A DNA stretch of 48,815 bases. It comes from Octopus bimaculoides. Its lineage: Eukaryota. The notes beneath the pieces are model-generated. The model saw nothing but the letters and a program-made list of their open reading frames with translations. It was not told the origin of the DNA and did no database searches. Positions within the stretch are counted from its first letter, which is position 1, and each line of letters opens with the position of its first letter. Both the position numbers and the translations under genes were made by a program. Of this stretch, positions 1-43,595 are shown piece by piece. Where the stretch lies: positions 185,323,878 through 185,372,692 of the forward strand of contig NC_068982.1 in the NCBI RefSeq assembly GCF_001194135.2. The letters run 5' to 3'.

Positions 1-289
1 AACAGTCTAGTTAGGGTTAGGGTTAACAGTCTAGTTAGGGTTAGGGTTAGGGGATTAATACGATATACACCGTTACAGCGCTAACTGTTTTCAACTGAAT
101 AGACGTCAGTGATTAGTAGAAATTATCGAAATAAGACAATTTTTTACATGAAATAAATTCGAATACAAAATTTTTTTTCTGTTCTATAACACAAAATAGA
201 TAAGTATACGAAGTTTGAAAGTCTTTCGGTACCAAAAACACTACATAAAACATAAATGAAAACTGGTGCCCCCGTTTTGAAATAGATCC
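1..289. mobile_element. Right part of a TTAGGG-bearing TIR MITE (GGATC-ended family)
   Basis: Near-identical to 43271-43538. Ends in ACTGGTGCCCCCGTTTTGAAATAGATCC, the reverse complement of the left TIR at 42892. TTAGGG units at 11-52 are interrupted by AACAGTCTAG. Confidence 0.8.
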
Positions 290-531
290 AAAAACGCTAT
301 TTAGCTATTATTTTTAGCACACCTCACAAACACCTCAATGACAAAAAGAAATGTGTAAACAAGTTGTTTAAATCATTCAATAGGCATCTGATGCAAATGC
401 GTTGAACAACACGTTACAAATTAAATATTTAATAAAAAAAACAAACATTTTGTTAACCAGTTTATAAATTCACATGTTCAGTTGTCAATAGACAGGTAAA
501 ACAAGTGGTTTCAATATATTTGTCAACACAG

Positions 532-741
532 GGCGGTGAGCTGGCAGAATCGTTAGCACCCCGGGCGAAATGCTTAGCGTTCTTAGTTCAAAATCCGCCG
601 AGGTCGACTTTACCTTTCATCCTTTCTGGGTCGATTGAATAAGTACCAGTTACACACTGGAGTCGATATAATCAACTTAATCCCATTGTCTATCCTTGTT
701 TGTCCCCTCTATGTTTAGCCCCCTGTGGGCAATAAAGAAAT
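532..741 (+). mobile_element. tRNA-derived SINE (subtype with AGCCCC..GTGGG.AATAAAGAAAT tail), internal 20-bp deletion
   Basis: A-box-like TGGCAGAATCGTTAG and B-box-like AGTTCAAAATCC. Homologous to 38030-38256. Approximate TSD ATATATTTGTCAA on both sides. Confidence 0.9.
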
Positions 742-7724: not shown

Positions 7725-8300
7725 TGTAAGAACGACCGTGCGAACTCAAAAAGGAGAAATGGTGACGAATGGAAAAACAGAGGACTCCTTTTATTTAAAC
7801 GTGTCACACGGTCGAACACAAAATAATATATCAAATATGATATACAAATATGTTATACTACGATAACATAAATAGCCAGTAATGAGACGATAGAAAAGAC
7901 AACCGTATAAGATGAATAACAGAAATATTTATTGTAGCGTTAAAGATGTATGTGTATGTGAGAGTGTGAATGTCCTTGTTAACGTTCGTCCACACAAAAC
8001 GAGTTCTTATTATCTTCTGTGTGGCACGAATGCCGGGGTGTGATAGGCAGTGAAGGGCAGTGAAAACACTTCGTCGGTGTTGTTCGGGGACGTAAGGACG
8101 TTCATGGCCAGTGGATGTATCACACCATATATGAGCGGTAGAAGAAGATAATAGTAACAGCTGGAATTTGAGGGACGACGAATTCCGTAGCCTACTAAGC
8201 TCTTCGTCGTTTTCCTGATCTGCCGCGATCAGCTCGAGATCGATTGTCTCCGGGGCGTGCAGAGCGTTAAGGTGGACGCGTGAAAGCGCGTCTGCTGCAT
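7725..8300 (-). mobile_element. Deleted Gypsy derivative: RNase H-integrase linker/HHCC fragment fused to the 3' part of LTR A
   Basis: 7725-7971 matches LTR A. 7972-8300 encodes ADALSR..YVPEQHRRSVFTALHCLSHPGIRATQKIIRTRFVW (integrase zinc-binding region). Confidence 0.85.
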
Positions 8301-8839
8301 ATTTTCCTGCTAGGGCATAGCAACTGAATCTGGTATTTGTAATCTTCCGCTTGACCATTTCTGTACTTTAGCCATATTGACATAAATCACGGGTCTCAAG
8401 GAAAATTGCAGACAATGTTCTTAAGCTGACTCCTGTGTATGCCACTAAGCCTAGGATATAGCTGCTATCAAATTACTATCATCCAGTAGCCATCCTAATC
8501 TGAAATATGCTTCTCTATAAGAAGGTCGAGAAAGAATGTGGGACCTCACATTTTATGAAGAAGCAGCCTTAAGTAATAGCATTCTTGCTAAGTTGGATGC
8601 ACTGTATAAACCCTTCCCCTTACATATTTATTATATTTTTTATAAGAAAAACGGTAACAGAAATTCCGAAATTCGGCTTGCTAACCTTCGTCAGACTATG
8701 GTACATTAGAGATCATCTTAAATTTATACAGTGTTTGGTAAGTTTTTTTTTTTTTTCTGAGGTAGGTGGAACTATGTTGAAGGATAATTACACTGTAGAG
8801 TAAGTTCTGATGGAAAGATATTATAGAGGGTTGCGAAAT

Positions 8840-8907: not shown

Positions 8908-10417
8908 TTATTTATACAATATCATGAATCTAATCTCATAATAGTCATGTCCAATTATTGTTAATTTACCATTTTACATTCGAAAGTGCCTTCAACATGA
9001 AATCGTTCCATAACATGAATTGGCTGTTATGAGACTAAATTTATAATATTGTATAAAGTATATACCCACTAAGTTACCTAATATACGAGTGCCTATCAAA
9101 CGTTTTTGCCAACTACATACAAACATACAAACATACGCAAACACATATACTCACACGTGCAAACAGCTGAGTTTCATCAATTCAATATCCAGTAACCCGG
9201 CATCAGATTTTTAATTTTTCTTAAGCATGTTCACAAGCCGCCAAGGTTATTCTATTATTGTCTGCATTCAAGTTAAAGAGAACAGTCGCTATCGCATAAA
9301 TGTTTTATATCTGCCTTTATCTATTTATATATTTTTCACTCACCCATAAGTGAAAATGTCTTCCAATGTTAATAAGAGTAATCAATTCAGGAAAGGTGTG
9401 AAAGGAAGTCATGTAACTCTCACACTGCACCTGGAAATCGAAAATATACAGTGTTTGAAAGGAGGTAAAAACCAGATTGCTATTGTGTATGACTATATAA
9501 CATAATACATTCTTGAACAATTTATAACATTAAGAAACTAAAGGACAAGTTAATGTAATTTATGACTGATTCTGAATCATGTAAAGATATTGATGTGCAG
9601 CAAATATTTAAAGAAATAAAACCCACAGAACTAGATACAAAGTCATTTAAGTGATTTAGTGAAAAAGCGATCCGAGAGTGTACCTATTTCATAATCAATG
9701 ATCATTGAAAACGCTAATTAATTGCATAAAGATATTGGAACCGTGGAGTCTTGTGTGTTCATAGGTGGTTTAGAAATTTTAAAGTTCTACGTGATATTCG
9801 GAAAGAGAATTTGTCCGGTAAAAGAAGTCGGCCGATTTTGAAGCTAATGAAGACTACTGTTAAATATCTAATGACCTGGTTAAGAAAATAAATAAATAAA
9901 TAATTAAATAAATGAATAAATAAATAAATAAAAATCACATTTCACAAGGTGTCAGGTGATGCCCGTGAGAGTGCTTGGCTGTCCCAATGCCTTAGTTTCG
10001 CCATCGTCCGTGGTAATACTGCGAGCGCGTGGGCTTGCTTCTGTAGGTTCCGTTGAAACCTTGTGCGACCAATTGAGGTACATGGTGTTGAATTGATGTT
10101 TCTTTTTGCTTTTCCTTTCTTTCTTTCTTTCTTTCTCCCACTTTTTCCTTTTCGTCTTTTTTTCTTTCTTCGCTCACGTTTGTGTTTCCTTCGGTTTTGG
10201 ATTTGTATTTTAATATGGTTTTGTAGTTTTGTATTATATACGTATCATATACATATGTGTCATATATGTAATAAAATAAAAGCAGTTATGGTCATTTTTA
10301 AGAGTGAGTCCCAGTACATCGGTATATTTGACAATCCAGTACCACGTAGTCCTCGAGGTTGCCAGGTTATGTATGTATGTATGTATGTATGTATGTATGT
10401 ACGTATGTATGTATTAT

Positions 10418-11062
10418 GGATGCTATTTTGGCGTGTGGTCTACAACTTAAGGGGCAATTATTTTAGGTTACTTTTTAGTTTACTTTTCAATTTCTAAAAA
10501 CCTTTAAGATGTTGGCAAAAGATTTTTACCGGTGATCAGCGAGCGACGAGACGAAGGTAGTTGCATTTTCACGAAGAAATGGTCTTTTAGCTGATGAAGA
10601 AAATGTTGCATCATGTCATCGTTGTGCTGGAGAAATGAAAGAAGCTTCAAGAAAAAGGGAAAAAACGGTGAAATTTTGGCAACTTTCCGTTGCAAAACTC
10701 GCGGCTGCCAAACTTGTGTGACCTACACGCTTATTTTAGTTATTATATTGTTTATTCTTGATTTCTTATTATTTACTAAGTCATAAATGAAACATAATTT
10801 TATCATTATTAAAATAGTAAGAAGTTTGAAAAAATACATTTACAATGCTAAGTATGTATAAAAGAATCTATTGTAAAAAATTTGGATAGCAATTTGATAA
10901 TAAGGATGAAATACAAATTTGAATAATTTTATCGATGAATTGAGCGAACATCTGCTAGAAACGCAAGAACATCTTAGGGGGTTTTAGAAACTGAAAAGTT
11001 AACTAAAAAGTAACCTAAAGTAATCGCTCTTTAAGTTGTAGATCACACGACAAAGTAGCACC
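10418..11062 (+). mobile_element. Merlin (IS1595-like)-type non-autonomous TIR element
   Basis: ~95-bp imperfect TIRs starting GG(A)TGCTA. Internal remnant 10509-10715 translates to AFSRRNGLLA..CHRCAGEMKE..FRCKTRGC (N-terminal Zn ribbon like Merlin transposases). Both flanks are (TATG)n. Confidence 0.6.
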
Positions 11063-11599
11063 TATGTATGTATGTATGTATGTATGTTTGTTTTAACTTT
11101 TTTTTTATCAATAAGAATTCTTCCGAGGAGAAATGAGCCAGTTTCTAATAAAGAAACAAAAGCTTCATCACTGGAATTTGGATAATAACGACGATAATTG
11201 TTACACATCGAACATTAAGAAGTCTCGTATATTTGTATTGCTCCGTTTACAGACTTATCTGTAAAGTTTGTGTTGGCTGGTCTCTTTCTTTCCAAGGGTT
11301 TTCCAGATTACCACTCATTTAATAACATAACCAAGTGCAAGAGTAATTATTGGTATAAATATAAATTTATAATGAGTGTTGAAGAGGTGCAGGTTTCGAA
11401 GTAGTTATCTGCAAATATTCATATCGATGATATTAGTAGAGATGTTCGCATCTGCAGGGCAACTAACGTGTGTATTTTTATATGTATGCATGTGTTATGT
11501 ACATGTGTGTGTGCGAATATGTGATTATCGTTGTCCATCGAATTTGAAAATGATAATTTTCGTCATATGCGTCTTTTAAAGACTGCACATTTCAATCCT

Positions 11600-12300
11600 C
11601 CATGTGCAGCTTTAGTGGTCTATAGGACATGTGAATGTTTGGTTGGAGACGCTAGCTATTAATCTGTGTGTATGCCTCTTGTACTCCTGGTTCCACCTGT
11701 AGAAATAGCTATCCGCACGACAAGATTTCTGCTGGAATATTGGTCAGTTCACGCGATTTTTCTTCCCCGCACCTTTTTGAGATTTTCATGCAGTACTAAC
11801 TTTTCCCAGAATGGTGTTTCGTCCAGGTGGAGTTTCGTTCAGGATGGGAATTTGACTATCAAATGTTAGACTTGGTGTATAGATACTTAGTAATGTGACA
11901 TAGCGGTAATCTGCTCGTTAATGCCAACTGGTGTCTCGGTCAGTTTAGACAACAGACTGTTTCTTATAGTAGAACCATATTAATGATGTTCATCCACGTG
12001 GTAGCCATTTCTGAGGGAAGCGTGGTCCTCACCAATCACATTAAGAGAACCCTCATCATGTTGCTTGGACTGAGTGAGTTCAATGTTACACTTCAGAAAT
12101 TCAGTTAATGGCTATGAGAGTCGTTCGACGCTCGAACTGGCTTGGTGTTACACGTCGAAAGGTTTAGCAGAAGTTTGTTATCCTGTTGAACAATTTTTCG
12201 GCCGTCTTTCGTAGGTCTTTCCTCAGATGGAGGAGCAGCGTTGTTTCTAGATAAGGTGCACAGGTGTTTATCAATCCCAGCTGCCAACGACTATTACCCT
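11600..12300 (-). pseudogene. RTE LINE APE-endonuclease remnant
   Basis: Frameshifted translation includes HDEGSL, GSTIRNSLLSKLTETPVGINE and TLLSIYTPSLT, matching RTE endonuclease motifs. Confidence 0.55.
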
Positions 12301-13545: not shown

Positions 13546-13994
13546 ACCACCACCACCGCCACCACCTACTACTACAACTACTACTACTACAGCAAGGTGC
13601 AGTGATGTTAAAGGTAACAGTTAAAGGTAATGTACCAATTTACTGATTATCATCGTCTTTGATAATGATTTCAAATAAATTTGGAGCCTTTTTATCTATT
13701 GTTCTTATAATCTTTTTGTAAGATGTGTCGATGTTTCTCAGATGGTAGAGTGTCGGAGCTCAAATTTTACCGTGACAAAAAAAAAAAAAGTACTGGTCCA
13801 ATATAAGTCAACTTTTCATCTAGCCCTCCCCATGTAGTACCAGTAAATTTTCGGAGTTACTATAATCGACTATTTCCCAAATGCTACCCCAATATGGGGA
13901 AAATTTGGCTTTATGCCTGAAAGTAATCATTGCGGATTTTTTTTTACATAGACACAAGTCCATAAATCTCTGAAGCGAGAAATAGATGCAGATG

Positions 13995-14090
13995 ATTAAA
14001 TCGACCCAGTACTTCACTGATATTATATTTCATTGATCCTAGGAGAATAGAAAACAAAGTTGACGTCGGCGGGATTTGAACTCAGCACTA
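13995..14090 (-). mobile_element. tRNA-derived SINE fragment
   Basis: TCGACCCAGTAC...AAAGTTGAC.TCGGCGGGATTTGAACTCAG is the reverse complement of the SINE core and B box. Confidence 0.55.
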
Positions 14091-14790: not shown

Positions 14791-15458
14791 AAAACAAAAA
14801 CTGAAACTAAGTGACGAGCAAGTCTCACCTAGAAATGGGCCGAGAAGAAGCTATCGCTGAATTGTCTGGTGGCCATAAATAAAAAGATTGAGTTATATAC
14901 GAAATTGAAGGGGTTGAAGGCAGACACCTTACTTTTCCATCTTTTTAGTGAGGAATTCTTAGGATTATATTATTCAAAGTATTCTTTTCCTAATAAGAAA
15001 GACAATGGGATGTTATTTGAGGGAGATTTGGTTGCTATTTGCAGCAGGTTAGACGACTAAATAGAGACTCCTCCGTTAGAAGTATTTAGTTCGGTAGAGT
15101 ATTTAGTACGGATAACCACTCAGTGGGTAGAAGGTTTAATAGAGTAGTCACTCATTAGAGGATAGTATGTTTATTAGGGTTATAGTGGATCTATTTAGGG
15201 TAGCCATCATATTGTGGGTGGAGTACAGTTGCTTATATCGGTTCTTTGCTACAAGAAAAAAAAAGGCAATGATGGAGCATCTATGTAGTCATTTGTTCTG
15301 CTAAAAATAACAGTTACAACTCCTTTAAAACGTAAAAGCTTAACAACTACAGAAAATAGAACAATGTAGAAGCAGATGTCTGAGATATCTGAGTGTCTGA
15401 CAAGTGTGCTTGAACCAGGCTGATTTGGGCGAAATAACAGCCACTACCATATTGGCTT

Positions 15459-15665
15459 AACATTTTGGCACAAAGACAGAAATTTGTGGGGAGGGATTAA
15501 GTCGATTACATCGACCCCAGTGTTCAATTGGTACTTATTTTATCGACCCCGAAGGGATGAAAAGCAAAGGCGAACTCAGTGAAATTTAAACTCAGAACGT
15601 AAAATCGGAAGAAATACCACTAGGTACTTTTTCCGGCGTGGTAATGATTCTGCCAGCTCACCGCC
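15459..15665 (-). mobile_element. tRNA-derived SINE
   Basis: Reverse complement of the GGCGGTGAGCTGGCAGAATC head, B box and TCGACCCC core. Confidence 0.85.
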
Positions 15666-15680
15666 TTCCCATGTCTTAAA

Positions 15681-15897
15681 ATATTGGTTTCAAATTTTGG
15701 TTCAAGGTCAGCAATTTTGGTGAAGGGGGTAAGTCGATTACGTAGACCCCAGTGCTCAACTGGTATTTATTTTATAGACCCCCGAGAGGATGAAAGGCAA
15801 AGTCAACCCGGTGGAATTTGAACTCAGAATGTGAAGACGGACGACATGCCACCCAGTATTTTGCCCGGCGTGCTAACGATTCTGCTAGCTCGCCGCC
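15681..15897 (-). mobile_element. tRNA-derived SINE
   Basis: Reverse complement of GGCGGCGAGCTAGCAGAATCGTTAGCACGCCGGGC...GAGTTCAAATTCC. Confidence 0.9.
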
Positions 15898-16159
15898 TTA
15901 ATAGTCACGGCCATATTGGAAAGAAGAATGAAAGGCAATGTCGATTTCTGCTGTATTTGAACACAGAACATAAAGAGATGTAACTAGATATCCGTAACTA
16001 CACTCAACTGATTCTGTCATTCACCCCATTCGAGTACTGATGGTTTATTCCAGCCAACGAGGAAGCAGTTGTTGCTCGACCTGGTAGAAACACCTGCTAA
16101 ATTCCCCTCAGATCGCACTCCCTTGTTTTAAATATAGGATATATTCGCTATTTGTTTTT

Positions 16160-16366
16160 TAACTTAGGCGCATGCCAGCAATTTTGAGGGGAAGGGATTA
16201 GTCGATACCACCGATCTCAATACTTGACTGGTACTTTAGTCTATCGACCCCGGAGGGAGGAAAAACAAAGTTGGTCTCAGCAGGATTCGAACTCGGTATG
16301 TAAGGAGTTGGAACAAATACCGCAAGGCGTTTTCCGACGCTCTTACGATTTTGCCAATCCACTGCA
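16160..16366 (-). mobile_element. Older tRNA-derived SINE
   Basis: Diverged head, B box GAGTTCGAATCC, and core on the minus strand. Confidence 0.7.
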
Positions 16367-21337: not shown

Positions 21338-22800
21338 ATGGATCCTAAGAAGGTTAGTGCAAAAGACACTGCTGTGAAGAAGAAGAAGAAAAAAAAGCTG
21401 ATATGATAGAATTGGAGAAGGAAATCATTGATAGAGGAATGCGTGTAGTGGACATAACACGTAACTGCGACCAAAGCACGTCGACGATCTGCACCATCCT
21501 GAAGAGAAAGGATGAGATCAAGGCCGTTACAACAGCAAAGGGTGTCTCTAGGCTCCCCAAGCAATGCACATCTGACCACGAAAAGATGGAAAAATTACTT
21601 TTCCTGTGGATCAACGAGATGCAAGTCGCAGGGGGTACGATTACGGAGACCATCGTCTGCAAGAAATCACAAGCGCTGTATAGGGAATTCCTGAACAGAA
21701 CCCTGGAACATCGACGGAGGAGACATCAGCAAACGCATTTAAGGCCAGTCGCGGCTGGTTCGATAGTTGTTAAGAAGAGGACAGGTGTTCATAGGTATAG
21801 AGAAGCAGCAAGTTCTATCTGACACGAAGGTAGCTGAATATTTCGTGCGTGAATTCCGTCAGCTCACCGCAGCCAAGGGGTACATCGCACAACAGGCATT
21901 CAACTATGATAAAACTGGCCATTTTTGGTAAAAAAAAAAAAAGGTTCCCCCAAAACCTACATAACTGCAGAGGAGAAGAAAATGCCAGGCCACAAGCCTA
22001 TGAAAGATTGTCTAACTCTCACCCTTTGTGCCAATGTGAGTGGAGACTTGAAGATTAAGCCGCTCTTTGTCTACCATTCCGAAAATCCACGAGCGTTCAA
22101 GTCACACAAAATCCTGAAGGAGAAGATGCAGGTCATGTGGAGAGCAAACGTTAAGGCCTGAGTCACCAGGCAATTCTGCACCGAGTGGGTCAACCTTATC
22201 TTCGGACCAGCAGTGAAAAAGTACCTTCTGGAGAACGATCTTCCTCTCAAGGCCTTCCTCATCCTCAACAATGCTCCTGCTCACTTTCCTAACATTGAAG
22301 ATGATATCTTGGACGAATTTAAATTCATAAAAGTTCTATACCTTTCACGCAACACCACCCCTATCTTGCAGTCCATGTACACCAAACACCTCTTTCGTCG
22401 GTGCTTTGAAGTCACTGAAAATACAAATCTAATCCTTCTTAGTTTTGGAAGGAGCACTACAACATTATTAACTGCCTGAAAATCATCAATATGGCCTGGC
22501 ACTTAGAGGAGCTGACAACAGATGAACTCCTGTAGCTTCAAGAGCAGCAGCATTCAGATGCGGCGGAAGAGATTGATTCCCTGGAGGAGGACAGTGTAGC
22601 GGAGAAGGCTATCTCTACGAATGACATAAAGGCAGTGTTGGCAAAGTGGCCGTACGTTTCTGAATTTGTAGAAAAATATCACTCTGAAGAAGTATCTACA
22701 AGTGCATTCTTCTCTTGATATGTTTCGAATGATACGATCTGCAAGTGTGAAAAGTGAAGAAAGTGTGTCCAAAAAGTTTAAATTAAGCAAAGTGAGAGAG
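21338..22800 (+). pseudogene. Tigger transposase (CENP-B HTH + DDE_1), multiple frameshifts
   Basis: MDPKKVSAK, STICTILKRKDEIK, MEKLLFLWINE, CLTLTLCANVSGD.KIKPLFVYHSENPRAFK, AFLILNNAPAH. Confidence 0.9.
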
Positions 22801-23031
22801 AAAACGCCGGAAATTGTTCTTCTTGAAGTCTTAATTGGAAGGAGATCCTCTTTCCAAACAATAATCCTCATCCTCCCCACTCCACCGTCTTTCTCGTGCA
22901 TAAATCATCTCATCTTTAAGGTAATTAAATTAATAAAACCAGTTTACATATTTCTTTTGTATTCTCTTTTGCTACGTAAGGCGGCGAGCTGGCAGAAACG
23001 TTAGCTCGCCGGTCGAACTGCTTCGCGGTAT

Positions 23032-24478
23032 AACGGCTCTGTGAATTATTGTGAATACTGTTGTGTTACTTTGTGAAAAAAGTCGCGGTAAATAAATGTG
23101 ATTTTTGTGGAATTATTACGGTTACATTTCACGCGAGCTGCTGCAATTTTCCCCAGCTATGACAAGTGGTAGTGTCTCCAGTATGGAGAGCTATGTCAAG
23201 GCCACTGCGGTGAGGAAGCCAGTGCCGCTGGAAACCAAGTTAATCAAGTTGTATATGGAGGAGGTGACCAGAAGCAGGAATTTGATAGAAGTTGAGGGAG
23301 ACTCATACAAATTGTGTCCCCCANNNNNNNNNNNNNNNNNNNNNNNNNNNNNNNNNNNNNNNNNNNNNNNNNNNNNNNNNNNNNNNNNNNNNNNNNNNNN
23401 NNNNNNNNNNNNNNNNNNNNNNNNNNNNNNNNNNNNNNNNNNNNNNNNNNNNNNNNNNNNNNNNNNNNNNNNNNNNNNNNNNNNNNNNNNNNNNNNNNNN
23501 NNNNNNNNNNNNNNNNNNNNNNNNNNNNNNNNNNNNNNNNNNNNNNNNNNNNNNNNNNNNNNNNNNNNNNNNNNNNNNNNNNNNNNNNNAATTGGGACCA
23601 GTGGCGAAATCAAAAGTGCATAAATGGTGGGGATTTCGACTCGAAATGTGGCTTTTTGCCACATTCGAGGACATAGAAAGAATTCCCTACCAGATAGAAG
23701 TGGAGGATGAGAGAACGTTAAATGTTGTAGTCGAGGGAAGGATACCAAATTGCTACATACGCGGGGAAAGAGGTCATATGAAGACCAAATGCCCCCTATA
23801 TGAGTTCACACAGCCACAGCAAGAGAAAGCACAAGCAGAGGAGAAAAACATTGTAGACCACACTGAGGAAATGAAAGAGAGACAGAAGTGTGAAACAGCG
23901 AAAACGAAGAAGAACGAAAATGGAGCTACTAACCCTAAAAAGCGAAAGAAAAATAAGTCAAAGGAACGGTCAACAAAAAAGAAATAGAAAAGCCAGAAAC
24001 TAACAATGTACCTGAGGAGGAGAGAACGGATAAAGATGTCAAATACAAGAGGGTTTTGATAAAGTACGAGAATTGCGAGCAGATGGAGAGAAAAGTCGAG
24101 AGGTTGGAGGAGATAATAAGAGTGAAAATGCCAGAGAAATGTGCCGAGAAATGCATTTTGATACGTGAGGAAAGCTGCTGAGAGTGCATAGAAGAACTTG
24201 GTGAAAATATAATAACGAAACGGGTATGGTTGGTGGAGACACCACCCGCTAGAACTGATTATTTACATGACGTTGAATGTAAAAGTGAAAAACTGGATAA
24301 ATGTAACCACCCGACTTCGGGGGTCGAGTGGACATTGCGCCTCATTTTTTTCATTCTTGCATATTACTATTTTATTTTAAATTACCCCGATTTTATGTTT
24401 ACTGCGTTTTGTACTGTCTTTATGTTTTGTGATGTCTTAAAAATTCTTTGTATAGCCCTTTATGGGTAATAAAGAAAT
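23032..24478 (+). mobile_element. ORF1-only Tx1-like non-LTR element, copy 1
   Basis: Gag-like ORF1 with VEGRIPNCYIRGERGHMKTKCP knuckle. 3' end AGCCCTTTATGGGTAATAAAGAAAT. Flanked by CGGTAT on both sides. Confidence 0.85.
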
Positions 24479-24484
24479 CGGTAT

Positions 24485-26485
24485 TACGGGTCAGTGAGTT
24501 TACTGGTTGGACGTGTTATTACTCGCTGCGAGTTTTTTTAGTATAACGCCACTATTGTTTGGTGGGCGTTGCTGAGATGGAGAAAACGAAGACGTATGCA
24601 GCAGCGACAGGGAGTCGAGTTTCCGTCGTCCCAGGCCTGCTGAAGCAATATGAAATACATTGGAATGAAGACATGGCTGAGAAGGCTGGAAAATATAAAG
24701 AAATGATAAAGATGGAGGGGCCAAACGTAAAGTTGACCCCATCAGAGGAGGGAAAGACGAAAATGGAAATTGGAGTCTTGGAATATAAATCATTTTCAAG
24801 GAGAGTGCAACGAAGGAGGAGGTGGAGGAGTGTTTGAAGGAATTGAAAGAAGATGTGTCGTTTTTTATAAGAGGCAAGACATACGCGACTGTAGAGATCA
24901 CATTTGTATCGGAGGAGGCAGCAAAGAAATACGCCAATAAGACGTTAGCTAAAGGAAATTGGATGCTCTTTCCCAATAAGTTGGGTAGACGTATAACGTG
25001 GATTAGAGTGGGTAGGATCCCACCGAAAATAAAGTTGGAATGGGTAATGGCAGCAGTTTTTCCTGAAAGAGAAGGAGAAGATGTAAGGATAATTATGATA
25101 AGCAGAACCCAACAAACAAATTGCTGGGGGTATGGATTGGAGGTGCTTTTTATGGCAAGTCAGAAAGTTTACAGTGACATACCGGAGACACTGGAACTGC
25201 CTTACGAGGACAAACTGGACATAATGTTGGAGGGGAGACCTCCAAAGTGCTACGAATGTGGCAAAAGAGGTCACGTTAGAAGAAGGTGCCCAGAAATAAT
25301 GGAAAACAAAGAAATGGAAACGCAAGAAGGCGTGATAGAGGAGAGGAAACAGTCACAGGAAGAGGAGCAGAGAGCTGATTTTGAGGAAGCTAAATCAAGG
25401 AAGAGAGAAAGGAGGAGCTCATCGGCGAAAGTCGAACAGGGGAAAAAATGCAAATCACAGGATCAAGGGGGATCACTGAGGAAAGAAGATAATAGCAGCA
25501 GAACATTACCACAAAACCACACAGTCTCACAATCGCACAGACAGACAGATTCACAGATGCATAAACACACAGACATACATACACTCGGAAGCGTAGAAGA
25601 TAACGCAGAGTTGCAGAAACCTAAAAGCACAGAACCTGAAAACAGACACACAGCATGCAGACTTACAGTCACACAAACATGCAGACCCACAGACAGATAA
25701 ACACACAGTCACAAAGAAATATAGAAGAACAGACGCATGGTAGTACAGAATCACAAAAACAAAAAAGAACAGACATACAGACGCAGGAAGTACATAGGAA
25801 CGGCATATATTTGATGTCATATCGATATACACAAAAAATAGAAAAGAAGATATCCAAAATAAAANNNNNNNNNNNNNNNNNNNNNNNNNNNNNNNNNNNN
25901 NNNNNNNNNNNNNNNNNNNNNNNNNNNNNNNNNNNNNNNNNNNNNNNNNNNNNNNNNNNNNNNNNNNNNNNNNNNNNNNNNNNNNNNNNNNNNNNNNNNN
26001 NNNNNNNNNNNNNNNNNNNNNNNNNNNNNNNNNNNNNNNNNNNNNNNNNNNNNNNNNNNNNNNNNNNNNNNNNNNNNNNNNNNNNNNNNNNNNNNNNNNN
26101 NNNNNNNNNNNNNNNNNNNNNNNNNNNNNNNNNNNNNNNNNNNNNNNNNNNNNNNNNNNNNNNNNNNNNNNNNNNNNNNNNNNNNNNNNNNNNNNNNNNN
26201 NNNNNNNNNNNNNNNNNNNNNNNNNNNNNNNNNNNNNNNNNNNNNNGTAGTTTTATTTTGGATAAATTATTGAGATAATTTTGAAAAGAACTATCGAAGA
26301 CCATGAAAGGAACTATTGAGAACTGTTGAAATAATTGAAATAACGCGGCCGCCCCGGGGTGGGGCTGGGGTGGCCGTCCCATCATCATTGTTTAATTTCA
26401 TTGTTCCATTCTATCATGTGTTAATTGTCCCCGCATGTGTGTATTGTCCCATCTGTGTTTAGCCCCTTGTAGGTAATAAAGAAAT
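24485..26485 (+). mobile_element. ORF1-only Tx1-like non-LTR element, copy 2 (diverged family)
   Basis: ORF1 with RRM-like region and CCHC knuckle CYECGKRGHVRRRC. 3' end AGCCCCTTGTAGGTAATAAAGAAAT. Flanked by CGGTAT. Confidence 0.88.
24577..25700 (+). pseudogene. Tx1-type ORF1p (RRM-like + CCHC), one frameshift near 24820
   Basis: ORFs 24559-24837 and 24822-25700 overlap; ATG at 24577 (MEKTKTYAAA). Confidence 0.8.
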
Positions 26486-27159
26486 CGGTATTTCGTCAGT
26501 CTTTACTTTCTGAGTTCAAATTCCGCCGAGGTCGACTTTGCTTTTCATCCTTTCGGGGTCGATAAATTAAGTACCAGTTGCGTACTGGGGTCGATTTAAT
26601 CGATTGCCCCTGCCCCCAAATTTCAGGCCTTGTGCCTAGAGTAGAAAAGATTTTTATAATTGTCATTTTCTTGTAACTGCACCTTTTCTGTTTTAAAACC
26701 CATAAAAAATTATTTGTGGGTGGTTTTGGGACGTTGGAACGGATTAATTATATTTTAATTAATTCCAATGGGGAAAATTGATTTGTTAAACGAGTAAATC
26801 GTAAAACGAGCTCGGTCATGAAACGAATTAAAATCGTACTGCACGGTATCACTGTATTAATTTTTCCAAAAAATTTTTGTGATTTTCATAGGTGACATGA
26901 AAAGTTACATTAGTGTAGAATTTTTCAATAAAATCAGAACAAGCCTATCAAACCGAAAAAATCTCATTCGTGTATTTAGTATATAGAATGCTCCTGTAAG
27001 GTATTTTCTCTCAACATTATTGTTGATATCATTCAAGATGTACTAGCGTGACCATAGGTTTGTGTCAGCTCTAGGTCAGTTATGATCACGCAGAATACTG
27101 ATCAATGTCTTCTAGTCGTTACTATTATCCTATCATATTTTTAACCATTTTCAACAAGT

Positions 27160-36304: not shown

Positions 36305-38420
36305 GAAGGAATACTCACACCAAGTGATGTAATCCTAACTGCATACGGAGGTACCAGGATTCCACAACTGGGCAAAACAGCCAATACAGGGACACACAAA
36401 GGGAAAAAAAAGATGAAGTGTTCTTTTTATATCACAAGAACAGAAGGACCCGAAATTCTCGGACTTAATACTTGTCAAAAGCTCAACACTGTGGCAATCA
36501 ACATTGAAGTGAAAGCAGCAGCTAAGCTGCTAAAGGTATGACAAAACCAACCCAGCCAACTAAGAGACCTAAACCTACACAAGAAGTTGCAACAGTAGCA
36601 GCCAAAAAAGCTCAGCTTGTTAAGGAAGCTCCAAAAGTTTTTGCCAAGGGAACAGCCAAACCCTGTAAGCAGGCTCAACTAGCTAAAGCAACCAAATCAC
36701 CAAAGGTTGTTGGCAAAGGAGTTCAGCCAGGTAAGGTAGCTGGAAAGGCTGCAAAGCAGGCAAAGCCAACACAGCCTATTAAAGCTACTAAACAAGCACA
36801 GCAAACTGCTAAACGAACAGCAAAAACAGTCCCAGCCTAAACAAGGTCAGGCACCGAAGGGTCAGCTTGCTAAACAGGGTCAAACTCCAAAGCAGGGTCA
36901 GGCTCAAAAGCAAATTCAACCCCCAAAACAAGCCCAGCCAGCTGCCAAGACATTGAAACCAGTACAGGCTGCAAAGCAGACGCAACCTGCTGTCCAGGCC
37001 CAGCCAGCTGCCAAATCATCCAAATCAATGCAGAAAGAGATTCTTGATGAAATCCACCCAAGGGTAGATGGGAATGGAAAAATGCAAACTCCGAGCCAAG
37101 TCAGCTGTATATTGGGTAGTCATGTACAAAGACATAAAAAAGATGGTTTCTACATGCCATATCTGTCAAAAGTACGGAAACTCGCAACAAAAGGAGGAAT
37201 CGATACCCAGTGACATCCCAAGATACTCAAGAAGGCCATGGCAAACTATTGGAGTAGATCTGTTCACAGAGAACCAAGAATGGTACTTGATTATGGTCTG
37301 CTACTACTCTGAATTCCCATTTGCGAGAAAAGTGAAAGACCTGAGAGCCAAAACAATAACTACAGTGGCTCGAGGACTTCTAGCAGAGCAAGGAATATCA
37401 GAGCAGATCATATGTGACAACGGAACCCAGTTCACATCTCAGGAATTCAAAAAGCTAACCAATGAATATGGGTTCAATATTATAACCTCATCTCCACACT
37501 GCTCCAAAGGTCTAGGATTCATAGAAAGACAGGTGCAGAGAGTCAAGAGAACACTAGTCAAATGCGGGAAACTAAGGAAGACCTACACCTGGCACTACTG
37601 TCCCTACGAGCGACACCACTGAGGGCTGACATGAAGTCCCCAGCAGAAATGCTGAATGGCAGGTAGTACAAAACCACCTTGCCAACAAAGATCCAACCTC
37701 CTATTGACCAGGAAGAGACAAGGGCAAAGCTAGCAGCCACTCGAGAACAAGGACAGAAATATTACAACAAACCTGCACAGTTCTTACCTGAGATACTTGG
37801 AGGACAATATGTGCATACTCAAGATCCTATAACCAAAACATGGATTCCAGCACAAGTCAGTAGAGCCGAAACTCCACGATCATATATTATAGAAACTGAA
37901 TCTGGTAGGCAGCTGAGCCGAAACAGGGCCCACACCCGCCCAACACCAAAGCTATCGAGGATAACATGCACACCACCTGCAGCATCAGTGACAACACCAA
38001 CAAGAACCCCAACACCCACAGCAGATGATGGCGAGCTGGCAGAAACGTTAGCACGCCGGGCGAAATGCTTAGCGGTATTTCGTCTGCCGCTACGTTCTGA
38101 GTTCAAATTCCGCCGAGGTCGACTTTGCCTTTCATCCTTTCGGGGTCGATTAAATAAGTACCAGTTACGCACTGGGGGTCGATGTAATCGACTTAATCCG
38201 TTTGTCTGTCCTTGTTTGTCCCCTGTGTGTAGCCCCTTGTGGGTAGTAAAGAAATAACACAGAATTCGTGTTTTCACAGAATCATCACCCCCAACGGGCA
38301 CCAACCACCCATCAGCATCCCAACAACACATCAACATTACGCACATCTCTGACACCAGTGCAGAGCACAAGATCCACCAGATGGAGACCGAATACTTTAC
38401 CACCAATTCGATATCTTTAA
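36302..38420 (+). mobile_element. Gypsy-like pol remnant: protease C-half, K/A/P/Q-rich linker, integrase; no RT/RNase H
   Basis: ILTAYGGTRIPQLG..EILGLNTCQKL at 36302-36520. Integrase: GMEKCKLRAKSAVYW..CHICQ, WQTIGVDLF, IICDNGTQFTS, GFIERQVQ, PRSYIIETESGRQLSRNR. Confidence 0.85.
38030..38256 (+). mobile_element. Intact tRNA-derived SINE (empty CGGTAT site at 38073-38078)
   Basis: A box, B box GAGTTCAAATTCC, core, and tail AGCCCCTTGTGGGTAGTAAAGAAATA. Inserted in the integrase C-terminal region. Confidence 0.95.
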
Positions 38421-42816: not shown

Positions 42817-43595
42817 GGCGAAGGTAAAGGATACACACACCACCCATTTTCGGCGTAACCCTAGCCCTAAAACTAACCTTAAACCTAACCCGGATCTATT
42901 TTAAAACGGGGGCGCCAGTATTTTCTTAACGAAACACTTTGAAACTTGGGACACTGGTAGAATGTGTCATATAAAACATCTTTTACTCTTAGTCTTCTTA
43001 ACAAAAANNNNNNNNNNNNNNNNNNNNNNNNNNNNNNNNNNNNNNNNNNNNNNNNNNNNNNNNNNNNNNNNNNNNNNNNNNNNNNNNNNNNNNNNNNNNN
43101 NNNNNNNNNNNNNNNNNNNNNNNNNNNNNNNNNNNNNNNNNNNNNNNNNNNNNNNNNNNNNNNNNNNNNNNNNNNNTATAATAAATTACGCTGTGCGTAT
43201 CTGTATGCAACAATTTTAGAGTTCGGATTCTAGAGTTAGGGTTAGTTTTAGGGTTAGGGTTACGGTTACGGTTAACAGTCTAGTTAGGGTTAGGGTTACG
43301 GGATTAATACGATATACACCGTTACAGCGCTAACTGTTTTCAACTGAATAGACGTCAGTGATTAGTAGAAATTATCGAAATAAGACAATTTTTTACATGA
43401 AATAAATTCGAATACAAAAATATTTTTCTGTTCTATAACACAAAATAGATAAGTATACGAAGTTTGAAAGTCTTTCCGTACCAAAAACACTACATAAAAC
43501 ATAAATGAAAACTGGCGTCCCCGTTTTAAAATAGATCCCCTAACCCTAACCCTAAACGCCGAAAACGGGAGGTGAGCGTATTCTTTACCTCCGTC
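42817..43595. mobile_element. MULE-like MITE with telomere-repeat core (host of inner MITE)
   Basis: 40-bp TIRs (33/40 identical), exact 9-bp TSD ATAAGGGAG (42808-42816, 43596-43604), (CCCTAA)n-like core. Confidence 0.8.
42892..43538. mobile_element. GGATC-ended MITE with internal TTAGGG tract
   Basis: TIR GGATCTATTTTAAAACGGGGGCGCCAGT vs ACTGGCGTCCCCGTTTTAAAATAGATCC (1 mismatch in 28). Flanks TAACCC|CCTAAC are consistent with a CC duplication. Confidence 0.85.

What the first reader, a model, noticed from the sequence alone, without database searches (positions are those of the whole stretch)
22980..26651. Two diverged retroelements inserted in tandem at one hexamer inside a SINE: a SINE-targeting retrotransposon system
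Seen: SINE head, CGGTAT (23026-23031), element 1, CGGTAT (24479-24484), element 2, CGGTAT (26486-26491), rest of SINE. The intact SINE at 38030 carries a single CGGTAT at exactly this position (38073-38078), between its A and B boxes. The two elements start alike (AACGGCTCTGTGAATT vs TACGGGTCAGTGAGTT) and end alike (..GGTAATAAAGAAAT), but their ORF1 proteins are only distantly similar, so this is not a recent tandem duplication. Known: several Tx1-clade LINEs are target-specific (tRNA spacers, U2 snRNA, microsatellites, other TEs). Inference: two families independently hit the same site, using an abundant SINE as a safe harbour and splitting its Pol III promoter. I know of no description of this in cephalopods.
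Basis: partly seen in the sequence, partly recalled or inferred. Interest (0 to 1): 0.9.

Follow-up and report, generated by a model that had tools for sequence, protein, structure and literature searches.

The report
SINE-targeting ORF1-only LINE derivatives in octopus
Two different half-LINE retroelements, which keep only the first gene of an L1/Tx1-type LINE, sit head to tail at exactly the same six bases inside an octopus SINE, and a gap-free locus from a second octopus species shows the same arrangement, so this is best read as a new example of the known habit of Tx1-like elements of inserting into one chosen spot of another repeat.

Summary
A SINE is split at 23031/26486 with exactly six bases (CGGTAT, SINE positions 44-49) present three times, around and between two elements (E1 23032-24478, E2 24485-26485). 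Neither element has a reverse transcriptase. Both are about 1.5-2 kb: a short 5' UTR, a type-I ORF1 (tandem RRM-like fold plus CCHC knuckle) and a 3' tail. They belong to two multi-copy families with about 30% ORF1 identity, so this is not a local duplication. The assembly gaps lie inside or at the end of ORF1, and their flanks are collinear with full-length family proteins.

Full-length octopus relatives carry an ORF2 with APE endonuclease, RT and zf-RVT that is strongly L1-like. They share the same 3' tail, which also ends one SINE subfamily.

A gap-free Octopus vulgaris locus (L007) holds two other ORF1-only elements in tandem inside a SINE. They sit at a different site (position 10/11) with the duplicated target sandwiched between them. 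Four further relatives all sit at one site of another repeat, and one full-length relative lies in (ATT)n.

Target-specific insertion is therefore well supported. It is the known Tx1-clade behaviour with a new target. A genome-wide flank census and the autonomous partner are still missing.

The parts
22983..23025 (+). Head of host SINE (subfamily B), SINE positions 1-43, including the A-box-like TGGCAGAAACG
   Evidence: 92% identical to positions 1-49 of the intact SINE
23026..23031 (+). Target-site duplication copy 1 (CGGTAT, SINE positions 44-49)
23032..24478 (+). E1: ORF1-only non-autonomous LINE derivative (E1/P0010 family) with an assembly gap at 23324-23589. No ORF2.
   Evidence: tblastn with P0010: residues 1-47 at 23183-23323 and residues 167-282 at 23592-23936, 74-84% identity. 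No RT or EN ORF.
23159..24181 (+). E1 ORF1, decayed. It is interrupted by the gap and has a stop or frameshift near 23985. The zinc knuckle at 23751-23792 is degenerate (C-x2-R-x4-H-x4-C).
   Evidence: (no zf-CCHC hit for E1)
24440..24478 (+). E1 3' tail of type A (..TAGCCCTTTATGGGTAATAAAGAAAT), shared with E2, X1, X2, SINE subfamily A and the full-length LINE L003
24479..24484 (+). Target-site duplication copy 2 (CGGTAT), sandwiched between E1 and E2. It may be 7 bp (CGGTATT) for E2.
24485..26485 (+). E2: ORF1-only non-autonomous LINE derivative (E2/P0002 family) with an assembly gap at 25865-26246
   Evidence: tblastn with P0002: residues 1-73 at 24577-24795 and 81-315 at 24801-25583, continuing to residue 341 at 25864. 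The right flank is 3' UTR with the tail.
24577..25864 (+). E2 ORF1 (tandem RRM-like core plus CCHC knuckle at about 25245-25295), with a frameshift near 24800-24822. The C-terminal 63 or so codons lie in the gap.
   Evidence: Pfam zf-CCHC; AF2 model of P0002 and Foldseek hits to tandem RRM proteins
26447..26485 (+). E2 3' tail of type A (..TAGCCCCTTGTAGGTAATAAAGAAAT)
   Evidence: 88% identical over 42 nt to the SINE-A tails at 700-741 and 38216-38255
26486..26491 (+). Target-site duplication copy 3 (CGGTAT)
26492..26651 (+). Rest of host SINE (positions 50 to end), with the B-box-like GAGTTCAAATTCC and a type-B tail (..CAGGCCTTGTGCCTAGAGTAGAAAAG)
   Evidence: 90% identical to the intact SINE over positions 44-162; tail alignment A1
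38030..38255 (+). Intact reference SINE (subfamily A) with a single, unoccupied CGGTAT at 38073-38078. Its 3' tail equals the E1/E2 tail. It is inserted into a Ty3/gypsy-like pol ORF.
535..741 (+). SINE subfamily A copy with the same tail, flanked by its own ~14-bp duplication (ATATTTGTCAA.AC) in AT-rich DNA. It lacks the CGGTAT region because of a 20-bp deletion.

Best explanation
E1 and E2 are two non-autonomous, ORF1-only derivatives of L1/Tx1-type LINEs ('half-LINEs'). They entered one SINE copy in two separate target-primed reverse-transcription events, and a reverse transcriptase/endonuclease (ORF2p) supplied in trans by an autonomous relative did the work.

Proposed steps:
1. The ORF2p recognises the conserved 3' tail (..GCCCCTTGTGGGTAATAAAGAAAT).
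2. Its APE-type endonuclease nicks the bottom strand of the SINE between positions 43 and 44 (top strand GCTTAG^CGGTAT).
3. cDNA synthesis starts at the last base of the tail.
4. The top strand is cut 6-7 bp downstream, which produces the CGGTAT duplication.
5. One copy of the duplicated target stays usable, so a second element of another family was inserted there. This gives head-to-tail elements with a target copy sandwiched between them.

Shown: the nested anatomy; the exact 6-bp duplication; membership of the two elements in different multi-copy families; the absence of ORF2; the shared tail; a second independent tandem-in-SINE locus; and target-specific behaviour in relatives.

Inferred: that the specificity lies in the partner's endonuclease (by analogy with Tx1L); trans-mobilisation; the order of the two insertions; and any 'safe harbour' benefit.
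For: Anatomy and the 6-bp duplication.

Distinct families, each with other copies: E1 is 74-84% identical to P0010 and 77-89% to P0117; E2 is 63-89% identical to P0002 and 95-96% to P0001/P0004; E1 and E2 are about 30% identical to each other.

ORF1 type: zf-CCHC and a tandem RRM-like fold (pLDDT about 90 for residues 30-250).

LINE affiliation: the L003 relative has ORF1 plus a 1132-aa ORF2 with Exo_endo_phos, RVT_1 and zf-RVT. That ORF2 matches human L1 ORF2p at E=2e-71 over the EN and RT regions. L003 has the same tail.

Second locus, L007 in O. vulgaris, with no gaps: SINE head, CAGAAACGTC, X1, CAGAAACGTCAGCACGCCG, X2, CAGAAACGTTAGC.., rest of SINE. Both 3' junctions read AAAGAAAT|CAGAAACG. 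The whole structure is flanked by the SINE's own duplication ATATTTAACCT.

Relatives L001, L002, L006 and L010 all lie at one homologous site of another repeat, with 19-20-bp duplications. The full-length LINE in L004 lies in (ATT)n.

All four SINE-borne elements have the same orientation as the SINE.

Precedent: the Tx1 clade is target-specific, and tandem copies sandwiching a target duplication are described for Tx1-Mar/SINEU (PMC4494074). A type-I ORF1 is consistent with Tx1 (PMC5203782). L1-Tx1 families are annotated as active in O. vulgaris (PMC13282606).
Against: Only two SINE loci (four insertions) were seen, and no genome-wide census of E1/E2 flanks was possible.

The two loci use different SINE positions, so 'the' target is not a single site.

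No autonomous element with ORF2 was found at either SINE site.

SINE copies carrying the same tails (A or B) sit in ordinary AT-rich sites with their own duplications. If the tail alone defined the partner ORF2p, these SINEs should share the targets.

The Argonauta relative in L005 has an ordinary 16-bp duplication in non-repeat-looking DNA, so specificity is not universal in this group.

E1 and E2 are decayed copies, and continuity across the E2 gap is unproven.
Confidence: 0.68

Rival explanations
1. Short-motif preference rather than SINE recognition. The partner endonuclease prefers a short motif (top strand roughly GCTKRG^CRG; bottom strand CYG^CYA(A)GC). That motif occurs at two places in the SINE. 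SINEs are hit often only because they make up about 12% of the genome and carry most copies of the motif.
For: The bottom-strand contexts of the two sites look alike: CCG/CTAAGC at position 43/44 and CTG/CCAGC at position 10/11 (read). One SINE subfamily is used at two positions. SINEs are 11.6% of the O. vulgaris genome (PMC13282606).
Against: A motif of about 7 bp would occur very many times outside SINEs, yet all four events seen for this subgroup are in SINEs and both loci are doubly occupied. With n=2 sites, the similarity may be chance.
Confidence: 0.12
2. The targeting determinant is carried by the ORF1-only element itself. Either its ORF1p binds the SINE or Pol III factors on it, as TRE5-A ORF1p binds TFIIIB, or its RNA pairs with the target through 3' read-through. 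It would then borrow a non-specific ORF2p.
For: SINEs with the same 3' tails as the target-specific ORF1-only elements do not share their targets. At least five ORF1-only families exist, and several copies keep an intact ORF1 (P0002, P0009, P0010, X1), which suggests ORF1 is needed. The targets lie in the region of the SINE that carries the Pol III promoter-like boxes.
Against: Junctions are precise to the nucleotide and are reused by diverged ORF1s (about 30% identity). That fits a sequence-specific nick better than tethering. No 9-mer complementarity was found between any element and its own target. Near-identical tails occur on LINE lineages with different target behaviour (L003, L004, L005), so several partner ORF2p proteins with different endonucleases are a simpler explanation.
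Confidence: 0.1
3. There was a single chance insertion. The tandem and the SINE flanks then arose secondarily, by unequal or ectopic recombination or gene conversion between SINE copies, by retrotransposition of a composite SINE-plus-element unit, or by scaffolding error across the gaps.
For: The window has two gaps, so three contigs are joined only by scaffolding. The L007 composite is flanked by one duplication, which is compatible with the composite moving as a unit.
Against: E1 and E2 belong to different families, and so do X1 and X2, so each tandem needs two insertions at one nucleotide. Each of the three junctions in the window lies in contiguous sequence. If mis-scaffolded, they would be three separate loci with the same CGGTAT boundary, which would argue even more strongly for targeting. 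L007 is gap-free. The window and L007 use different sites and so are not copies of one composite.
Confidence: 0.05
4. In-situ tandem duplication of one element followed by divergence.
For: Head-to-tail arrangement with similar termini.
Against: The ORF1s are about 30% identical to each other, but each is 63-96% identical to other genomic family members. The host SINE halves are about 90% identical to other copies, far less diverged than E1 is from E2.
Confidence: 0.01

Closest known systems
Tx1-Mar LINEs and SINEU in crocodilians (Kojima 2015, PMC4494074)
   Same: L1-group elements insert at a defined position of another interspersed repeat. Several families share the target, non-autonomous partners are involved, and tandem copies sandwich a target-site duplication.
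   Different: The target there is a Mariner DNA transposon and here a SINE. The non-autonomous partners there are snRNA-headed SINEs and here protein-coding ORF1-only elements. Here, SINEs with the same tail do not appear to share the target.
Tx1L/Tx1D and Tx2L/Tx2D of Xenopus laevis (Christensen et al. 2000, as cited in PMC4494074)
   Same: A LINE that inserts site-specifically into another transposable element family. The specificity is attributed to its APE-type endonuclease.
   Different: Tx1L is autonomous and its target is a piggyBac-type DNA transposon. No endonuclease has been identified or tested for the octopus elements.
Keno, Mutsu, Kibi, Koshi (Tx1 clade; Kojima & Fujiwara 2004, as cited in PMC4494074) and NeSL/LIN tRNA-gene-specific elements (PMC4640811)
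   Same: Target-specific non-LTR elements that use multicopy small-RNA genes or microsatellites. The octopus relative in L004 lies in (ATT)n.
   Different: Those targets are functional RNA genes or simple repeats, not a retroposed SINE family. The NeSL/LIN elements use a restriction-like endonuclease.
HAL1 ('half-L1') of mammals (mentioned in PMC5753468; the details here are from my own knowledge)
   Same: Non-autonomous LINE derivatives that keep ORF1 and the termini but lack ORF2, and that propagate as families.
   Different: HAL1 has the type-II L1 ORF1 (Transposase_22) and no target specificity. The octopus elements have a type-I ORF1 (RRM plus CCHC) and are site-specific.
LINE/SINE pairs with a shared 3' tail (Kajikawa & Okada 2002, as cited in PMC4494074)
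   Same: The last 40 or so nt are shared between LINE, ORF1-only elements and SINE subfamilies (alignment A1).
   Different: Here the SINE is also the insertion target of elements from the LINE group whose tail it carries.
Dictyostelium TRE5-A and yeast Ty3 (Pol III-directed integration; from my own knowledge)
   Same: Retroelements associated with Pol III-transcribed, tRNA-like units.
   Different: Those elements integrate at a distance outside the gene through TFIIIB/TFIIIC contacts. Here insertion is at exact nucleotides inside the unit.

Membership tests
Tx1 clade / L1 group of non-LTR retrotransposons | ORF2 with an N-terminal APE-type endonuclease, an RT and a C-terminal zinc-binding motif | tested here: not met
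   E1 and E2 have no ORF2, so they are at most non-autonomous derivatives. Relatives with the same ORF1 family and tail do have one: L003 ORF2 has Exo_endo_phos, RVT_1 and zf-RVT and matches human L1 ORF2p at E=2e-71.
Tx1 clade / L1 group of non-LTR retrotransposons | RT-domain phylogeny places the element inside Tx1 rather than L1 proper | not testable with these tools
   No labelled Tx1 or L1 reference set (Repbase, RTclass1) was available. Indirect evidence: among the LINE superfamilies annotated in O. vulgaris, L1-Tx1 is the only one from the L1 group (PMC13282606).
Tx1 clade / L1 group of non-LTR retrotransposons | Type-I ORF1p (RRM domain(s) plus CCHC zinc knuckle) | tested here: met
   zf-CCHC in E2, P0010 and P0103. 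In the AF2 model of P0002, residues 30-250 have pLDDT about 90, and the top Foldseek hits are tandem RRM proteins. PMC5203782 links this ORF1 type with Tx1.
Target-specific non-LTR retrotransposons | Independent copies at the same nucleotide of a repeated target, in fixed orientation, with target-site duplications | tested here: met
   Window: two families at SINE position 43/44. L007: two families at SINE position 10/11. L001, L002, L006 and L010: one site of repeat R. The sample is small, and genome-wide enrichment was not tested.
Target-specific non-LTR retrotransposons | The element-encoded endonuclease cleaves the target sequence specifically | not testable with these tools
   The partner ORF2 is not identified. 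This needs biochemistry.
HAL1-like ORF1-only non-autonomous LINE derivatives | ORF1 and LINE termini retained, ORF2 absent, and propagation as multi-copy families with defined ends | tested here: met
   E1, E2, X1, X2, L002, L006, L010 and L008/L009 are all 1.5-2.0 kb with a 5' UTR of about 80-130 nt, ORF1, a 3' UTR and a tail.
HAL1-like ORF1-only non-autonomous LINE derivatives | Derived from the mammalian L1 type-II ORF1 (Transposase_22) | tested here: not met
   No Transposase_22 hit. The ORF1 is the RRM plus CCHC type. This is an analogue of HAL1, not a member.
Stringent LINE/SINE partnership (shared 3' tail) | The 3'-terminal sequence of the SINE is homologous to that of the LINE | tested here: met
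   Alignment A1. The SINE-A tail matches the E1, E2, X1, X2 and L003 tail (88% over 42 nt). The SINE-B tail matches the L002, L006 and L010 tail.
tRNA-derived SINE (host) | The head is recognisable as tRNA-related and carries A and B boxes | tested here: inconclusive
   ARAGORN and Rfam give no tRNA call, even at E up to 10. By eye, there is a B-box-like GAGTTCAAATTCC and an A-box-like TGGCAGAAACG. Octopus SINEs are annotated as tRNA-Core and tRNA-Deu in PMC8967140.
Pol III-tethered integration (TRE5-A / Ty3 type) | Integration at a characteristic distance outside the Pol III gene, without a fixed target sequence | tested here: not met
   The insertions are inside the SINE at exact, reused nucleotides.

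The most novel reading that the evidence does not exclude
The ORF1-only elements carry their own targeting module, either ORF1p or an RNA feature, and merely borrow a generic ORF2p. This would explain two things: why SINEs with the very same 3' tails land in ordinary AT-rich sites while the ORF1-bearing elements land at exact sites of a SINE or of repeat R, and why so many independent families have kept ORF1 but discarded ORF2. It would be a LINE system in which target choice is separated from the endonuclease.
Probability: 0.1. Interest if true: 0.85.

Novelty: new member of a known kind. Interest (0 to 1): 0.55.

Why it matters
Target-specific LINEs are studied both as examples of 'polite' genome parasites and as templates for programmable gene insertion. 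A cephalopod group would extend the known target range of the L1/Tx1 group in three ways: small protein-coding half-LINEs insert at exact nucleotides of an abundant SINE, related families use other repeats or a microsatellite, and the target SINE itself carries a tail from the same LINE group. It would also give a compact system for asking which component sets the target, because the cargo is only ORF1 plus a tail of about 40 nt. For octopus genomics, it explains a class of annotated 'uncharacterized CCHC-domain proteins' and of nested SINE/LINE annotations.

Tried and rejected
1. Genome-wide census of flanks. This was not possible. The word-indexed protein search found only O. bimaculoides UniRef proteins without contigs. 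Scans of the metagenome and viral collections for ORF1, the SINE core and the tail found nothing, so no octopus DNA is held there.

2. RNA-guide idea. No shared 9-mers were found between any element and its own target beyond shuffle expectation.

3. A common host repeat upstream of the L003, L008 and L009 elements. The flanks are not homologous, so no target claim is made for those. A recurring ..CCGACAG just 5' of them is left unexplained.

4. tRNA identity of the SINE head. ARAGORN and Rfam were negative.

5. Local tandem duplication, rejected.

6. An ORF2 hidden in the gaps. Rejected for E1, because the gap is inside ORF1. Unlikely for E2, given the gap size and the gap-free ORF1-only relatives.

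7. Clade assignment from names of ORF2 homologues. The hits carry no useful names.


Full report
**What is in the window.** BLAST places SINE positions 1-49 at 22983-23031 and positions 44-162 at 26486-26603 (alignment). The host SINE is therefore split, with exactly CGGTAT (positions 44-49) duplicated, and a third copy of CGGTAT lies at 24479-84 between the two inserts. Both inserts end in ..GGTAATAAAGAAAT. Their first 16 bases match at 12 positions. Otherwise they align only around a zinc-knuckle region and over the last 35-40 nt.

**Gaps, tested first as requested.** The gaps were bridged with full-length family proteins found later.
- E1: the left flank ends on the codon for residue 47 of P0010, which is the last base before the gap. 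The right flank begins at residue 167. About 355 nt are missing, against 266 N. The N count does not keep the frame, but the flanks are collinear parts of one ORF1, so the gap cannot hide an ORF2.
- E2: the left flank ends at residue 341 of 404 of P0002, and the right flank is 3' UTR with the tail. The 382 N can hold the remaining 63 or so codons plus UTR. Continuity is plausible but not proven.
- All three CGGTAT junctions lie at least 239 bp from a gap, inside contiguous sequence. If the scaffolding were wrong, they would represent three loci with the same boundary, which would not weaken the inference.

**What the inserts are.** Neither insert encodes a reverse transcriptase or endonuclease.
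- Each is a short 5' UTR, one ORF and a 3' UTR of about 200-300 nt. The E2 ORF has a Pfam zf-CCHC knuckle. The E1 knuckle is degenerate and its ORF is frameshifted, and the E2 ORF is frameshifted too, so both copies are dead.
- An exhaustive HMMER search found 486 homologues. Those whose source could be traced are cephalopod proteins from O. bimaculoides, O. vulgaris, O. sinensis and Argonauta hians. The window is therefore from O. bimaculoides or a very close relative.
- E1 belongs with P0010 and P0117 (74-89% identity). E2 belongs with P0001, P0002, P0004 and P0154 (63-96%). E1 and E2 ORF1s are only about 30% identical to each other. They are two separate multi-copy families, not a diverged local duplication.
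- An AlphaFold model of P0002 is confident (pLDDT about 90) for residues 30-250. Its best structural matches are tandem RRM proteins. Together with the knuckle, this is a type-I LINE ORF1p, the type associated with Tx1-like elements in non-mammalian animals (PMC5203782).

**Relatives with DNA context.** Ten loci could be fetched through annotated ORF1 homologues.
- L003 (O. vulgaris) holds three tandem full-length LINEs with a period of 5273 bp and 99.4% identity. ORF1 is followed by a 1132-aa ORF2 with Exo_endo_phos, RVT_1 and zf-RVT. That ORF2 matches human L1 ORF2p at E=2e-71 across the endonuclease and RT regions.
- L004 (O. sinensis) and L005 (Argonauta) are also ORF2-bearing.
- L1-Tx1 is the only L1-group superfamily annotated in O. 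vulgaris, with 13 recently active families (PMC13282606). The group is therefore L1/Tx1. A formal RT phylogeny could not be run.
- The last 40 or so nt of these LINEs, of the ORF1-only elements and of the SINEs align (alignment A1). Tail A (..TGTCCCCTCT.TGTAGCCCCTTGTGGGTAATAAAGAAAT) is shared by E1, E2, X1, X2, LINE L003 and the SINE copies at 535 and 38030. Tail B (..AGGCCTTGTGCCTA..AAAGAGAAA) is shared by another ORF1-only lineage and by the host SINE subfamily. This is the classical shared-tail relation between LINEs and their dependants.
- Every close relative of E1 and E2 that could be inspected is also ORF1-only and 1.5-2.0 kb with defined ends: X1, X2, L002, L006, L010 and L008/L009. 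Half-LINEs are therefore a regular form in this group, analogous to mammalian HAL1.

**Test of targeting.** The fetched loci are still informative, because they were chosen by ORF1 similarity and not by their flanks.
- L007 was retrieved through the closest available O. vulgaris relative of E1 (P0087, 53% identical to P0010). It reads as follows: the SINE's own duplication ATATTTAACCT; SINE head GGCGAGGTAG; CAGAAACGTC; X1 (1.65 kb); CAGAAACGTCAGCACGCCG; X2 (2.0 kb); CAGAAACGTTAGCACGCC..; the rest of the SINE; ATATTTAACCT.
- This stretch of L007 is gap-free. Two diverged ORF1-only elements again sit in tandem in one SINE, in SINE orientation, with the target sandwiched between them. Both 3' junctions are identical (AAAGAAAT|CAGAAACG).
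- The site is SINE position 10/11, in the A-box-like region. It is not position 43/44, and the CGGTAT of that SINE is unoccupied.
- Four further relatives (L001, L002, L006, L010; tail B) all lie at the homologous position of another repeat, with 19-20-bp duplications such as AGCAAGCCAGGCTACTCCAG.
- The full-length LINE in L004 is embedded in (ATT)n. The Argonauta LINE in L005 has an ordinary 16-bp duplication.

**Mechanism.** The best-supported reading is two sequential target-primed reverse transcriptions into one SINE copy.
- A trans-supplied ORF2p recognises tail A and nicks the bottom strand at GCTTAG^CGGTAT. cDNA synthesis starts at the last tail base, and the second nick falls 6-7 bp downstream.
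- That the endonuclease sets the site is inferred from Tx1L (Christensen et al. 2000, as cited in PMC4494074). It is not shown here.

**Observations that complicate the mechanism.**
- The two SINE sites share a loose bottom-strand context (CCG/CTAAGC and CTG/CCAGC). A short motif, rather than 'the SINE', might therefore be what is recognised.
- The SINEs that carry tail A or tail B are themselves dispersed in AT-rich sites with their own duplications. They do not share the targets of the ORF1-only elements that carry the same tails (note). The simplest answer is that several autonomous lineages have near-identical tails but different endonucleases; L003, L004 and L005 show that such tails do go with different target behaviour. 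The more novel answer is that the ORF1-only element itself carries the targeting determinant. No element-to-target complementarity was found.

**Comparison and novelty.** In how it works and what it belongs to, this is a target-specific L1/Tx1-type system whose visible members are ORF1-only dependants.
- I found no description of a SINE as the target, or of site-specific ORF1-only families, in the searched literature. That library is incomplete, and Repbase could not be consulted.
- I rate it a new member of a known kind, with two less usual features: protein-coding half-LINEs as the targeted cargo, and a target SINE that carries a tail from the same LINE group.
- The Pol III promoter-splitting and 'safe harbour' points are consequences or interpretations. 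The A and B boxes are identified only by resemblance to the consensus, and ARAGORN and Rfam do not call the head a tRNA.

**Verdict.** The decisive census, the partner LINE and the endonuclease assay remain to be done.

Noticed in passing
L007:8590-12494 (O. vulgaris OX597815.1): A second tandem-in-SINE case. Two different ORF1-only elements (X1, X2) sit at SINE position 10/11, with target duplications of 10-11 bp and 19 bp. The X1 ORF1 looks intact over about 375 codons.
   Followed up: yes
L001:9790-11780; L002:9917-11652; L006:9446-11186; L010:~9900-11771: Four ORF1-only elements with tail B all lie at the homologous site of another interspersed repeat ('R'). R has a foldback-like structure with ~90-bp direct repeats. 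In L001 the element's 3' end is deleted, and L010 has an inverted copy of its own 3' region at its 5' side. The identity of repeat R was not determined.
   Followed up: partly
L003:4438-19184: Three head-to-tail full-length L1/Tx1-type LINEs with a period of 5273 bp and 99.4% identity. Unit 1 has an open 1132-aa ORF2. The junctions differ in tail length and in a short spacer (ACACTGATAAG versus ACACCCGATAG). This may be a recently active family. A similar ..CCGACAG precedes the 5' ends of the L008 and L009 elements, and this is unexplained.
   Followed up: partly
L004:9720-15370: A full-length LINE of the same group is flanked on both sides by an (ATT)n microsatellite, which suggests a microsatellite-targeting lineage in O. 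sinensis.
   Followed up: partly
window 10-299 and 43259-43548: A 290-bp repeat, 96% identical between the two copies, that begins with telomere-like TTAGGG/TTACGG motifs. It is possibly the end of another element family.
   Followed up: no
window 37068-38257 and 7858-8358(-): ORF fragments of Ty3/gypsy-like integrase (Pfam rve, Integrase_H2C2). The SINE-A copy at 38030-38255 is inserted into the reading frame downstream of the first one.
   Followed up: partly
window 21403-21822: A 139-aa ORF with a weak Tc5/pogo-type HTH hit (below the Pfam cut-off), probably a remnant of a Tc1/mariner-superfamily transposase.
   Followed up: partly
window 15449-15899 (- strand): Two SINE-B copies in direct succession (76% identical, start-to-start spacing 232 bp), separated by about 20 bp. 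Further degraded SINE fragments lie at 13994-14088 and 16192-16356, making a local SINE cluster.
   Followed up: no
window 535-741: This SINE-A copy has a 20-bp internal deletion that removes exactly the CGGTATTTCGTCTGCCGCTACG region, which contains the E1/E2 target.
   Followed up: no
P0011, P0037, P0049, P0103, P0126 and P0002 (C-termini): Long ORF1 homologues share a conserved C-terminal motif (..L+..FP.DVG..) after a low-complexity linker. In the P0002 model it is short and only moderately confident. Its function is unknown, and it is missing from several ORF1-only families.
   Followed up: no
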